Made by a program: the position numbers and the translations under genes. Under the pieces are notes generated by a model, which did no database searches, was not told where the DNA came from, and worked only from the letters and a program-made list of their open reading frames with translations. A stretch of 64,000 nucleotides of DNA, from NCBI RefSeq assembly GCF_001194135.2, contig NC_068989.1, forward strand, positions 85,721,111-85,785,110, in the 5' to 3' direction. Positions within the stretch are counted from its first letter, which is position 1, and each line of letters starts with the position of its first letter. The stretch is from Octopus bimaculoides (lineage: Eukaryota). This document shows positions 42,005-43,906 of this stretch, in pieces.

Positions 42005-43906
42005 CTAGAAAAATATGTTGTAATCAATATCAAATTTTATGGGTTCGATGACGCGGTTCTCGGAATGTGTCGGAGGTAAATTATCAGCTTCAGGGACCGC
42101 TTCATTGGTGTCCAACTGAAATTGTTCAGCATTTGCTTCAATGTGAAGCTGTCTGTGTTCAACCAATTGGTTATATTGAAAGAACTCAACACCACAAATT
42201 TCACAAGGGAAAGCTTTCTCCTCGGCATGAGAACGTCGGTGAATTGATAAATAATCATTACGGGTGAAAGCTTTACCACAAATTTCACACACATATGGCT
42301 TCTCACCAGTGTGTACCCGTCGATGGCAGGACAGATAGTCTTTCCGAGAGAAGTTTTTACCACAAACTTCACACTGGTATGGTTTCTCACCAGTGTGAGT
42401 ACGTCTGTGAGAAACAAGGACGTGACTCTGAGAGAAAGATCGACCGCAGATTTCACATGGAAATGGCTTCTTTTCGGCGTGATTAATTTTATGGCGTTGT
42501 AAATAAGTTATGTCAGAGAAAGCCCTGTTACAGATCTCACAATGGAAGGGCCGGTTTCCTGTGTGTTTTTCCTTGTGAGCCTCTAATTTACTACTACAAT
42601 CAAATGACCTGGCACATATGTCACAGCTGAAGAGCTTCTCGTTACATTGGCTATCTTTGTGTTCTATAAAAGCATTCTTTTCAGAGAAATCCTTGCCACA
42701 TGCTTTGCAATGGAATGATGACTTCTCAGTAGAAATATCTTCTTTGAGAGGAACATCATCACAGTCTTTAGAAAATGATTTATCAAACACACCGAGAGTT
42801 AGGTCTTTGCCATCATCATGAATCACTTTGTGTTGAAGTAACGAGGCTTCATCAGAGAAAATCTTATTACATATATCACATTCAAACGTTCCTTCCCTGA
42901 AGTGGATATATCTATGACGCATTAAATTACGTTTTAGAGAGAATATTTTGCCGCAAATGTCACAAAATGGCTTCACTTTTGCATGAGTTAGCTTGTGACA
43001 TTGGAAAGTACTCTTAAATGAGAATTTTTTCCCACAAATATCACATTCGTAGGGTTTTTCTCCAGTATGAGTACGTACATGAAGGGATAAATCACATGGT
43101 CGTAAAAATGCTTTACCACAAACCTCACATAAGTGCGGCTTTTCTCCAGTGTGTGCTCTTCTGTGGTCAGACAAATGGCAATTCCGTGAAAATGCTTTAC
43201 CACAGAATTCGCAATGAAATGGTTTCTCTCCAGTATGAATACGCTTGTGCCGAGTCAACTTACAATTCTGAGAAAAAGATTTGCCACAAAATTCACAGTA
43301 GAATGCTTTCTCTGTCAAGGGCATCTGTTTCTTGAAGGTGGTTAATTTACTGCTCTCAAGAAGTGTCTTAGCAACAAAATCTGCATCAAATGTCTTCCCA
43401 GATATGAGAATCTCTTTGTTATTGGTCAGCAGGCTGTTCTCAGGGAATGGCTCTTGAGACAAATCCCTTTCAGATGTCTCTTTATCCAACTCAGTTTGTT
43501 TGTTGTTTGCCATTAAATTGCTGTCCCCTGGAAATGCCTTCCCAGATATTTCGCTATTAAAACTTTCCTCTTCATCAGACTGAGTGGAGTCTTTCTGACT
43601 TCCCAAGCCACTCTTCTCTGGATACGCCTTCTCTAACGTATCGCTGTCGGATGTTTTTTCATCTGACCCAGCTTGCTTGTAGTTGCTAGACTTATTCTTC
43701 TCGGGCAAAGTCATATCAGACATTTCACTATCAGATGATTTCTCACTTGACGGAGAGTCTTTGTGATTTGCAGACTGACTATTCTCAAGAAATGACTCGT
43801 CAGATATGTCACGAAACGTTTTCATACCTAATGGACTTCCTTCCTGACTGGTAGACTGACAGTTTTCAGTAAATGCCTCATTAGACATGTCACTGTTATA
43901 CTCCAT
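42005..43906 (-). CDS. ZF2: C2H2 zinc-finger protein, 633 aa; acidic repeat N-terminus, 12 canonical fingers plus one C2HC-like finger
   Basis: Single uninterrupted ORF; fingers start at aa 202 (43303); TGEKP linkers; short non-finger C-terminal tail. Confidence 0.95.
   Translation of the reverse strand: [633 protein letters not shown]

What the first reader, a model, noticed from the sequence alone, without database searches (positions are those of the whole stretch)
43304..43900. ZF2 acidic N-terminal domain is seven fossil zinc fingers
Seen: aa 3-201 divide into units of 28, 27, 28, 30, 29, 28 and 29 residues that run in register into the first true finger. The units are [28 protein letters not shown] / [27 protein letters not shown] / [28 protein letters not shown] / [30 protein letters not shown] / [29 protein letters not shown] / [28 protein letters not shown] / [29 protein letters not shown], versus [28 protein letters not shown]. 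The two Cys positions are mostly Ser, the core Phe (pos 10) and Leu (pos 16) and the EK linker persist, the His ligands are gone, and the charge has shifted to acidic. The frame stays open over 600 nt. Established: vertebrate tandem ZNFs use KRAB, SCAN or BTB effectors, and none is recognisable here. Inferred: cephalopod ZNFs may have built their own acidic, Ser-rich effector or disordered region by exapting dead fingers.
Basis: partly seen in the sequence, partly recalled or inferred. Interest (0 to 1): 0.8.

Follow-up and report, generated by a model that had tools for sequence, protein, structure and literature searches.

The report
Seven dead zinc fingers, amplified after death
The first third of an octopus zinc-finger gene is a run of seven former zinc fingers that have lost their metal-binding residues, appear to have been copied after that loss, and now form an acidic, serine-rich tail; this is an extreme case of a decay process already known in vertebrate zinc-finger genes.

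Summary
ZF2 (window 42005-43906, minus strand, 633 aa) lies in Octopus bimaculoides chromosome CM046609.1. Residues 3-201 are seven 27-30-residue units running in register into 13 canonical C2H2 fingers.

Evidence that the units are former fingers:
- The 28-residue period has z = 6.3 (0/3000 shuffles).
- The unit profile matches a finger profile position for position (0/300 permutations).
- An exhaustive search of 1.84 billion proteins with this almost Cys/His-free segment found canonical finger arrays in 19 of 20 hits (best E = 2.5e-10).

New findings:
- The units share non-finger codons (Ser AGY at Cys-1, Ser TCT at Cys-2) and group together in a tree. A finger that had already lost its ligands was probably amplified, or the units were homogenised by gene conversion.
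- The frame is open (0 stops against 13.6 expected).
- pN/pS among units is 0.62, against about 0.9 under selection for the open frame alone.
- Composition lies far from both live fingers and mutational equilibrium.

The segment is therefore translated and moderately constrained. An effector role is inference only. No related N-terminus exists in any other protein searched, so this is not a shared cephalopod domain. One to three dead fingers upstream of an array are common in vertebrate ZNFs, which makes ZF2 an extreme variant of a known kind.

The parts
42005..43906 (-). ZF2 coding sequence, a single open frame of 633 aa plus stop. The identical gene product is called on Octopus bimaculoides GCA_001194135.2, chromosome CM046609.1.
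43304..43900 (-). Array of seven ligand-less ex-zinc-finger units (aa 3-201); acidic (pI 4.4, net charge -18), 35 Ser, only 2 Arg
43817..43900 (-). Unit 1 (aa 3-30, 28 aa), [28 protein letters not shown]. Cys positions are Ser AGT and Ser TCT.
43736..43816 (-). Unit 2 (aa 31-57, 27 aa). It keeps one His (H48, CAC) at ligand position 19; Cys positions are Arg CGT and Ser TCT.
43652..43735 (-). Unit 3 (aa 58-85, 28 aa). Ser AGT and Ser TCT at the Cys positions; Tyr TAC at His position 19.
43562..43651 (-). Unit 4 (aa 86-115, 30 aa), the most acidic unit (net -6) and the most diverged
43475..43561 (-). Unit 5 (aa 116-144, 29 aa), [16 protein letters not shown]..., the most finger-like unit
43391..43474 (-). 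Unit 6 (aa 145-172, 28 aa)
43304..43390 (-). Unit 7 (aa 173-201, 29 aa), next to the first live finger; the only unit with net positive charge
42803..43303 (-). Live fingers 1-6 (aa 202-368), canonical C2H2. Finger 1 is the live finger closest to the dead units (49.7% nt identity).
42716..42802 (-). Isolated dead finger inside the array (aa 369-397), [29 protein letters not shown]. All four ligands are lost; F10 and the EK linker are kept.
42128..42715 (-). Live fingers 7-13 (aa 398-593). Finger 7 is a C2HC-like variant (H-x4-C).
42005..42127 (-). Short acidic C-terminal tail plus stop codon (aa 591-633 have pI 4.05)
43907..44127 (-). Probable 5' leader of the coding exon. There is an in-frame stop 9 codons before Met1, Met1 sits in the context aaaATGG, and a candidate 3' splice site tttgctttctattgtag|G lies near 44125. 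The splice site is inferred from sequence only.

Best explanation
ZF2 is an intact, single-coding-exon poly-zinc-finger gene of Octopus bimaculoides. Its N-terminal 201 residues are a tandem array of seven former C2H2 fingers that can no longer bind zinc.

Shown: the units are homologous to fingers, position for position, and run in register into the live array.

Shown, moderately: they form their own repeat family with shared derived states (Ser AGY at the first Cys position, Ser TCT at the second, Pro11, Glu12 GAG, Ser14 AGY, Thr28 ACA). The simplest history is that one finger near the 5' end of the array lost its cysteines by single-base changes (TGY to AGY, TGT to TCT) and that this dead unit was then multiplied by the same unequal crossing-over that expands live arrays. 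Gene conversion among dead units is the alternative.

Shown: the segment is kept in frame. Its amino-acid sequence changes more slowly than its silent sites. Its composition has moved away from both live fingers and mutational equilibrium, towards acidic, Ser/Thr-rich, Arg-poor and low in hydrophobic residues.

Inferred: it is a zinc-free, largely disordered acidic region fused to a basic 13-finger DNA-binding array. The old finger-core hydrophobic residues (positions 1, 5, 10 and 16) recur every 28 residues in an acidic background. That is the grammar of acidic activation domains and of acidic autoinhibitory tails. The most likely role is therefore a non-DNA-binding regulatory or effector region, acting by cofactor recruitment or by charge-based modulation of DNA binding by its own array.

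Approximate confidence by part: origin from fingers 0.95; amplification or homogenisation after ligand loss 0.7; translated and constrained 0.7; specific effector or regulatory function 0.35. The single confidence value given for this explanation (0.6) is for the composite without the specific function.
For: Origin from fingers:
- Lag-28 periodicity, z = 6.3.
- Profile-profile match in exact register, 0 of 300 permutations reach it.
- Exhaustive phmmer search: 19 of 20 hits are canonical finger arrays, best E = 2.5e-10.
- A nearly gapless 162-residue alignment in which Ser or Arg of the units falls opposite Cys of the live fingers, and F opposite F, HK opposite HK, EK opposite EK.
- 58 bits against at most 14.8 bits for shuffles that preserve the 28-residue period.
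- Codons at former ligand positions lie within one base of TGY or CAY in 10 of 14 and 8 of 14 cases, against 24-26% background (P = 2e-4 and 0.012).

Amplification after ligand loss:
- Unit-to-unit nt identity is 55.6%, against 43.2% unit-to-finger. At third codon positions the figures are 46% and 33%.
- In-register pairs with the same amino acid share the codon 93 times against 65 expected; for Ser the rate is 0.56 against 0.21.
- Every unit's nearest neighbour is another unit.
- The seven units form one clade among 31 repeats with ligand codons excluded.
- pS among units is 0.66, against 0.81 (saturated) among live fingers.

Translation and constraint:
- 0 stops against 13.6 expected, 0 of 20000 shuffles.
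- All length changes between units are in frame.
- pN/pS is 0.62 (bootstrap 0.46-0.81), against about 0.84-0.91 in simulations that reject only stop codons. At matched pS, simulated pN is 0.56-0.62 against 0.41 observed.
- D+E is 19.9%, against 13.1% in fingers and 6.3% at equilibrium. Ser is 17.4% against 7.7% and 9.4%. Hydrophobic residues are 19.9% against 33% and 43%. Arg is 1% against 6.4% and 6.8%.

Other points:
- No known effector domain is present.
- AF2 gives no secondary structure for units 1-5 while giving the live fingers their beta-beta-alpha pattern. This is weak evidence, because the model is poor.
Against: - No orthologue or paralogue of the N-terminus was found in any database, so there is no between-species test of selection.
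- No evidence of transcription or translation was available.
- The pN/pS estimate rests on seven short paralogous units near synonymous saturation, pooled non-independent pairs and a star-tree simulation.
- Bootstrap support for the seven-unit clade is only 36%, plus 22% for six of seven. Shared acidic composition could pull the units together.
- The compositional shift and the constraint could reflect selection merely for a harmless, soluble spacer rather than for a positive function.
- CK2-type S/T-x-x-D/E sites (12) are not enriched beyond what the composition predicts (about 10 expected).
- The AF2 model is low-confidence throughout (mean pLDDT 44).
Confidence: 0.6

Rival explanations
1. 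Harmless spacer. The dead fingers have no positive function. They stay in frame only because they lie between the start codon and an essential finger array. Selection only keeps them soluble, non-aggregating and non-DNA-binding, which itself produces an acidic, Ser-rich, Arg-poor, hydrophobic-poor composition and a modest deficit of amino-acid changes.
For: - No homologue of the N-terminus exists anywhere else.
- The neighbouring ZNF gene has no such region.
- Dead fingers upstream of arrays are commonplace by-products of array turnover in vertebrate ZNFs (PMC6242934, PMC2865497).
- Constraint is only moderate: pN/pS is 0.62 with an upper bound of 0.81.
- No specific motif is enriched beyond composition.
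Against: - Seven copies of an already dead unit were retained or built up.
- Position-specific conservation among units includes hydrophobic positions 5 and 10 and the Pro-Glu at positions 11-12. That is more than compositional selection needs.
- In another octopod ZNF the zone holding dead-finger remnants is better conserved between genera (85%) than the rest of the N-terminus (63%).
Confidence: 0.3
2. Seven independent fossils. Seven once-live N-terminal fingers each lost their ligands separately, and their resemblance to one another is only what remains of the common finger consensus.
For: Finger decay by point mutation of single ligands is the documented route (PMC2865497, PMC10465944). 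The internal dead finger at aa 369-397 shows that independent death does occur in this gene, with different replacements (Leu, Phe, Leu, Ile).
Against: - Shared derived codons: AGY at position 3 in 4 units and TCT at position 6 in 5 units. These two Ser codon families cannot interconvert in one step, so selection for Ser does not explain the pattern.
- Excess synonymous-codon sharing in register.
- Units are closer to each other than to any finger with ligand columns excluded, and they form a clade.
- Units are less diverged at silent sites than live fingers are from one another.
Confidence: 0.15
3. Not translated. The real start codon is Met195, just before finger 1. The 600 nt upstream would then be a leader or a decaying pseudo-exon whose function, if any, is at the RNA level, since ZNF-coding-like sequence has been reported to affect polyadenylation and export in human cells.
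For: An in-frame Met195 lies 7 residues before finger 1. PMC6242934 reports RNA-level effects of canonical and degenerate ZNF-coding sequence in human ZNF12.
Against: - An untranslated leader would not stay free of stops for 201 codons (0 of 20000 shuffles; the other frames have 8-30 stops).
- It would not restrict indels to multiples of three, nor show pN below pS.
- Met1 has a good context (A at -3, G at +4), whereas Met195 has C at -3 and C at +4.
- The public gene call uses Met1.
Confidence: 0.05

Closest known systems
Degenerate (inactivated) C2H2 fingers upstream of the array in vertebrate KRAB/SCAN ZNF genes. [quoted passage not shown]
   Same: Finger-length units sit in register with the live array. 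They have lost Cys/His ligands but keep F10, L16 and the linker, and they lie between the N-terminus and the DNA-binding fingers. In the yardstick set, 44-61 of 138 poly-ZNF proteins have at least one such unit.
   Different: - Vertebrate runs are 1-3 units long (5 in one protein at the laxest threshold), against 7 here.
- They usually keep one or more ligands and sit behind a recognised effector domain such as KRAB or SCAN.
- Here all seven units are essentially ligand-free, constitute the entire N-terminus, share derived codons pointing to amplification after death, and have shifted to pI 4.4.
UniProt-style 'C2H2-type; degenerate' fingers that still fold (ZNF750 Z*, ZNF711 finger 7; PMC10465944)
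   Same: They depart from the CCHH consensus within a ZNF protein.
   Different: Those retain three ligands plus a substitute fourth (CCHC) and bind zinc with pM affinity. The ZF2 units have 0-1 possible ligands at the four ligand positions, so zinc binding is excluded on sequence grounds.
Acidic activation domains, and acidic autoinhibitory tails of DNA-binding proteins (named from general knowledge, not tested here)
   Same: Net negative, Ser/Thr-rich and probably disordered, with regularly spaced aromatic or Leu residues, fused to a basic DNA-binding domain.
   Different: There is no sequence homology and no functional assay. This is a resemblance in composition only.
Cephalopod C2H2 gene expansions (PMC12513265)
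   Same: ZF2 and its neighbour ZF1 are tandem, same-strand C2H2 genes in an Octopus bimaculoides cluster, of the kind described as lineage-specific expansions.
   Different: That paper's text contains no occurrence of 'N-terminal', 'effector', 'disordered' or 'degenerate'. The dead-finger N-terminus is not described there.

Membership tests
C2H2 zinc finger (Pfam PF00096), applied to the seven N-terminal units | Two Cys and two His zinc ligands with C-x2-4-C-x12-H-x3-5-H spacing | tested here: not met
   At the 28 ligand positions only one ligand residue survives (H48). Position 3 is S, R, S, S, S, R, A. Position 6 is S, S, S, L, S, S, V. Pfam gives no match in aa 1-201 even at E <= 10.
C2H2 zinc finger (Pfam PF00096), applied to the seven N-terminal units | Homology (common descent) with C2H2 fingers: 28-residue period, F10/L16 core and TGEKP-type linker in register | tested here: met
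   Best E = 2.5e-10 to canonical arrays; 0 of 300 permutations reach the profile score; 58 bits against at most 14.8 bits for controls.
C2H2 zinc finger (Pfam PF00096), applied to the seven N-terminal units | Zinc-dependent beta-beta-alpha fold | tested here: inconclusive
   Single-sequence AF2 gives coil for units 1-5 and beta-beta-alpha secondary structure for the live fingers. The whole model is low-confidence (mean pLDDT 44). Zinc binding cannot be measured with these tools.
Tandem C2H2 poly-ZNF protein, applied to ZF2 as a whole | Array of at least 3 canonical fingers joined by TGEKP-like linkers | tested here: met
   13 zf-C2H2 matches (E = 1.4e-47) and zf-H2C2_2 (E = 5.8e-65) in aa 202-588.
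KRAB / SCAN / BTB / ZAD-type ZNF effector domains | A recognisable N-terminal effector domain | tested here: not met
   Pfam scans of the whole protein and of aa 1-201 at E <= 10 list only zinc-finger families and weak chance matches.
Degenerate-finger relics upstream of ZNF arrays (the known phenomenon) | Ligand-poor, finger-like units contiguous and in register with a live array, in the same reading frame | tested here: met
   A run of 7 is found by the upstream-extension scan at the 95th-percentile threshold and a run of 3 at the 99th. The same scan finds 1-3 units in 44-61 of 138 other poly-ZNF proteins.
Acidic transcriptional activation domain | Reporter activation when tethered to DNA; cofactor binding | not testable with these tools
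   Only composition is available: net charge -18, with an aromatic or Leu residue at unit position 10 in all seven units and a hydrophobic residue at position 5 in six of seven.

The most novel reading that the evidence does not exclude
A zinc finger that lost its metal ligands became a new selectable repeat module. It was multiplied seven-fold after its death, driven to an acidic, disordered composition, and now serves as the effector or regulatory domain of a ZNF protein in a lineage that lacks KRAB. That would be a documented case of a folded DNA-binding repeat giving birth to a functional disordered domain within the same gene.
Probability: 0.25. Interest if true: 0.7.

Novelty: new variant of a known kind. 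Interest (0 to 1): 0.45.

Why it matters
Poly-zinc-finger genes are the largest transcription-factor families in vertebrates and in coleoid cephalopods. How cephalopod ZNFs act without KRAB-type domains is not known.

This locus shows, with unusually clean sequence evidence, what can happen to fingers after they die. They need not be deleted or decay to noise. They can be copied as dead units and remodelled into an acidic, low-complexity segment that remains translated and partly constrained.

If the segment proves to have activity, it would be a concrete route from a folded repeat to a functional disordered domain. If not, it is still a useful extreme example and a caution for annotation, because Pfam sees nothing in one third of the protein.

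The ligand-masked profile and upstream-extension scan used here could be run over whole cephalopod proteomes to ask how general the phenomenon is.

Tried and rejected
- Pfam on the N-terminus alone found nothing at E <= 10.
- PDB sequence search with the N-terminus found nothing at E <= 1.
- Tandem Repeats Finder on the DNA of 41900-44000 found no array; the units are too diverged, at about 56% nt identity.
- The word-indexed protein search with the N-terminus found nothing. With the full protein it was swamped by generic ZNFs at 45% identity or less, with no orthologue.
- Exact look-up of ZF2 and ZF1 in the 15-billion-protein collection: neither is present.
- A plain HMM of true fingers against the N-terminus gives only a weak score (3.3 bits; 2 of 1000 shuffles reach it). 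Masking the ligand columns helps little (7.3 bits; 2 of 1000). Profile-profile comparison and the exhaustive phmmer search were far more decisive.
- I suspected a higher-order three-unit repeat from the lag-87 signal (z = 4.3). The unit identity matrix shows no such structure, so it is simply three times about 29.
- I suspected that the roughly 530-residue N-terminus of the Octopus vulgaris ZNF45-like protein (P0069) was a second long dead-finger array. There is no global 28-residue period, only a few remnants at aa 13-26 and 69-101.
- A first census of 'non-finger segments versus pure arrays' was confounded by my segmentation and discarded. It was replaced by the upstream-extension scan.
- One of the 20 library hits, P0126, is a translated tandem repeat unrelated to fingers.
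- CK2-site enrichment was rejected: 12 sites observed against about 10 expected from composition.
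Full report
**What is there**

The finding lies in an open reading frame on the minus strand, 42005-43906, of 633 codons. An exact look-up places it on Octopus bimaculoides assembly GCA_001194135.2, chromosome CM046609.1, where a gene with exactly this 633-residue product is called.

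Pfam finds 13 zf-C2H2 matches between residues 202 and 588, no KRAB, SCAN, BTB or other effector domain, and nothing at all in residues 1-201 even at E <= 10.

They are followed immediately by the first canonical finger at residue 202. A second ZNF gene, ZF1 (27224-28321, minus strand, 12 fingers), lies 14 kb away on the same strand. These are the only finger-coding regions in the window.

**Is the pattern real?**

Yes, by four independent tests.

1. BLOSUM62 autocorrelation of residues 1-201 peaks at lag 28 with z = 6.3. None of 3000 shuffles reaches this at any lag.
2. A profile of the seven units was aligned by hhalign to a profile of the 24 canonical fingers of ZF1 and ZF2. It scores 16-17 and aligns position 1-28 to position 1-28. 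None of 300 column permutations reaches it (maximum 9-11.7), and cyclic shifts of the units always return to the same register.
3. An exhaustive phmmer search with residues 1-201, which contain one Cys and one His in all, against 1.84 billion representative proteins gave 20 hits at E <= 1e-3, the best at 2.5e-10. These run over stretches of up to about 190 residues. In 19 of the 20 the matched stretch is a canonical tandem C2H2 array. The exception is an unrelated translated repeat. The BLASTP alignment to the top hit is almost gapless over 162 residues. It places Ser or Arg of the units opposite Cys of the live fingers, and F opposite F, HK opposite HK, EK opposite EK.
4. Against the ZNF proteins held locally the real sequence scores 58 bits. 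Sixty full shuffles, and sixty shuffles that apply the same column permutation to every unit and so keep the 28-residue period, score at most 14.8 bits.

The codons add to this. At the 14 former Cys positions, 10 codons are one base from TGY. At the 14 former His positions, 8 are within one base of CAY: Gln CAG, Tyr TAC, Asn AAC, and one surviving His CAC. The background rate is 24-26% (P = 2e-4 and 0.012).

- At the first Cys position, four units carry Ser AGT or AGC. At the second, five units carry Ser TCT. These two Ser codon families are each one step from TGT but cannot interconvert in one step. Selection for serine would therefore not sort them by position, whereas common descent would.
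- Other shared states that are not typical of live fingers are Pro at position 11, Glu GAG at 12, Ser AGY at 14 and Thr ACA at 28.
- With the four ligand columns excluded, units are 55.6% identical to each other at the nucleotide level (46% at third positions), against 43.2% (33%) to live fingers.
- In-register pairs with the same amino acid share the same codon 93 times against 65 expected from out-of-register pairs. For Ser the rates are 0.56 and 0.21.
- Every unit's nearest neighbour is another unit, and the closest live finger is the adjacent finger 1.
- In a neighbour-joining tree of 31 repeats the seven units form one clade. Bootstrap support is only 36%, plus 22% for six of seven.
- Silent-site difference among units (pS 0.66) is lower than among live fingers (0.81, saturated).

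The simplest reading is that a 5'-terminal finger lost its cysteines and the dead unit was then multiplied by unequal crossing-over. Gene conversion among dead units would give the same picture. Shared composition may inflate the clustering, so I put this at about 0.7.

**Is the segment drifting or constrained?**

- The frame has no stop in 201 codons, where 13.6 are expected from its own base composition (0 of 20000 shuffles). The five other frames carry 8-30 stops.
- All length differences between units (27-30 residues) are in frame.
- An open frame alone could be explained by position, because the segment lies between the start codon and an essential array. I therefore compared amino-acid-changing and silent differences among units. 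Pooled Nei-Gojobori values are pN 0.41 and pS 0.66, a ratio of 0.62 (column bootstrap 0.46-0.81). Simulations that start from the consensus unit and reject only stop codons give ratios of 0.84-0.91, with pN of 0.56-0.62 at matched pS.
- Composition points the same way:

| Class | N-terminus | Live fingers | Mutational equilibrium (local non-coding DNA) |
|---|---|---|---|
| D+E | 19.9% | 13.1% | 6.3% |
| Ser | 17.4% | 7.7% | 9.4% |
| Hydrophobic | 19.9% | 33% | 43% |
| Arg | 1% | 6.4% | 6.8% |

The segment has moved away from both its ancestor and the neutral end-point. These are moderate, single-gene arguments on short paralogous units near saturation. They show that the segment is translated and filtered by selection, not what it does.

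**Start codon and upstream sequence**

Met1 has A at -3 and G at +4, and an in-frame stop lies nine codons upstream. A candidate 3' splice site (tttgctttctattgtag|G) lies near 44125, so the whole coding sequence probably sits in one exon after a 5' leader. This is read from the sequence only. Met195, seven residues before finger 1, is in a poor context.

**How it most likely works**

The N-terminus has pI 4.4 and net charge -18, with 35 Ser and 2 Arg. It is fused to a basic array with pI 8.7 and net charge +14. With at most one possible ligand per unit at the four ligand positions, zinc binding is excluded on sequence grounds. Single-sequence AF2 predicts no secondary structure for units 1-5 while giving the live fingers their beta-beta-alpha pattern, but the model is poor throughout (mean pLDDT 44).

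Position 10 is aromatic or Leu in all seven units and position 5 is hydrophobic in six of seven. Positions 1 and 16 keep a finger-core residue in four of seven. These residues therefore recur about every 28 residues in an acidic, Ser/Thr-rich background. From general knowledge, that composition is typical of acidic activation domains and of acidic tails that modulate DNA binding by a neighbouring basic domain.

I commit to 'disordered acidic regulatory or effector region' as the most likely role, at about 0.35. The main rival, at about 0.3, is a harmless spacer that selection merely keeps soluble and free of DNA-binding activity. CK2-type sites are not enriched beyond composition.

**How general is it?**

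This is not a shared cephalopod domain. The word-indexed search with the N-terminus found nothing. The full-length search found only generic ZNFs at 45% identity or less. The exhaustive search found nothing closer than ordinary finger arrays at about 25% identity. The neighbouring ZF1 has only a 24-residue N-terminus.

A caveat applies. The exact ZF2 and ZF1 proteins are absent from the protein collection, so O. bimaculoides paralogues may be missing from it. Eukaryotic genome DNA could not be searched with these tools.

The lack of any orthologue sits oddly with the apparently old divergence of the units (pS 0.66). This remains unexplained.

An unrelated octopod gene (ZNF45-like; Octopus vulgaris P0069 and Argonauta hians P0073) carries a few dead-finger remnants near its N-terminus (0 of 500 shuffles reach the score). 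That zone is 85% identical between the two genera, against 63% for the rest of the N-terminus and 95% for the fingers. Relics of this sort can therefore be conserved in octopods.

**Comparison with what is known**

Degenerate fingers are a documented by-product of ZNF array turnover.
- PMC2865497 describes degenerate, non-functional fingers within and after arrays.
- PMC10465944 discusses UniProt's 'degenerate' class.

As a yardstick I built a ligand-masked scoring matrix from 1868 canonical fingers, not including ZF2. I then extended upstream from the head of each array in 138 mostly vertebrate poly-ZNF proteins. At the 99th- to 95th-percentile thresholds, 44-61 of them have at least one ligand-poor, finger-like unit. 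The longest run is 3, or 5 in one protein at the laxest threshold. ZF2 gives 3, 7 and 7 at the three thresholds.

The 2025 survey of cephalopod C2H2 expansions does not mention N-terminal, effector, disordered or degenerate regions.

ZF2 is thus the same kind of thing as the vertebrate relics, but an extreme and unusually informative variant. It has seven units, essentially no ligands, makes up the whole N-terminus, shows signs of amplification after death, and has undergone a strong compositional shift.

**Verdict**

- Observation: confirmed.
- Interpretation: partly supported. Fossil fingers, yes. Independent fossils, probably not. Exaptation is plausible but untested. A general cephalopod effector is not supported.
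- Novelty: a new variant of a known kind.
- Interest: 0.45. This is a clean evolutionary vignette, with a testable idea that folded repeats can give rise to disordered domains. It rests on one gene with no orthologue, expression or functional data.

Noticed in passing
window 42716-42802 (-), ZF2 aa 369-397: An isolated dead finger sits inside the live array, between fingers 6 and 7: [29 protein letters not shown]. All four ligands are replaced (Leu, Phe, Leu, Ile); F10 and the EK linker are kept. It is also acidic. Its nearest repeat at the nucleotide level is N-terminal unit 2 (53.6%), a weak link.
   Followed up: partly
window 27224-28321 (-): A second ZNF gene (ZF1, 365 aa, 12 canonical fingers) lies on the same strand 14 kb away. 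Its 24-residue N-terminus, MCDTISSPNKDFSVHQQNHNTERL, looks like one partly degenerate finger that keeps H-x3-H but has lost the second Cys. It has no acidic repeat region.
   Followed up: partly
window 5117, 9392, 14362, 15061, 31193, 36542, 45462, 52302, 55510 (both strands): A dispersed repeat containing AAAGCCTTGTGAGTGGATTTG occurs 9 times in 64 kb (0.01 expected). It is probably a SINE-like element. One copy lies about 1.5 kb upstream of ZF2, and two copies abut assembly gaps.
   Followed up: partly
window about 15100-16100, 31220-31850, 40500-40900, 57600-58400: Four runs of N (assembly gaps) produce long spurious 'X' ORFs in the mechanical ORF list.
   Followed up: no
P0069 (Octopus vulgaris ZNF45-like) and P0073 (Argonauta hians), aa 10-110: An unrelated octopod ZNF has dead-finger remnants near its N-terminus, for example SKICGQDCPQRHNLQ...EKP and YLKEFAQRSSLHLPHLVEKA. 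This zone is 85% identical between the two genera, against 63% for the rest of the roughly 530-residue N-terminus and 95% for the fingers. There is no global 28-residue period.
   Followed up: partly
window 42632-42715 (-), ZF2 aa 398-425: Finger 7, [28 protein letters not shown], has H-x4-C in place of H-x3-H, a C2HC-like variant directly after the internal dead finger.
   Followed up: no
window 42005-42136 (-), ZF2 aa 591-633: The short C-terminal tail is also acidic (pI 4.05, net charge -7), so the basic finger array is flanked by acidic segments on both sides.
   Followed up: no
P0003/P0009 (ZNF112), P0004/P0006/P0008/P0010 (ZNF287), P0096 (ZNF329): Vertebrate ZNF112, ZNF287 and ZNF329 relatives carry 2-3 consecutive ligand-poor, finger-like units directly upstream of their arrays. 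These were useful comparators for dead-finger relics.
   Followed up: partly
window 44548-44600: A long A-rich tract on the plus strand (about 30 A followed by AG-rich sequence) lies about 650 bp upstream of the ZF2 start. It may be the tail of a retroposed element.
   Followed up: no
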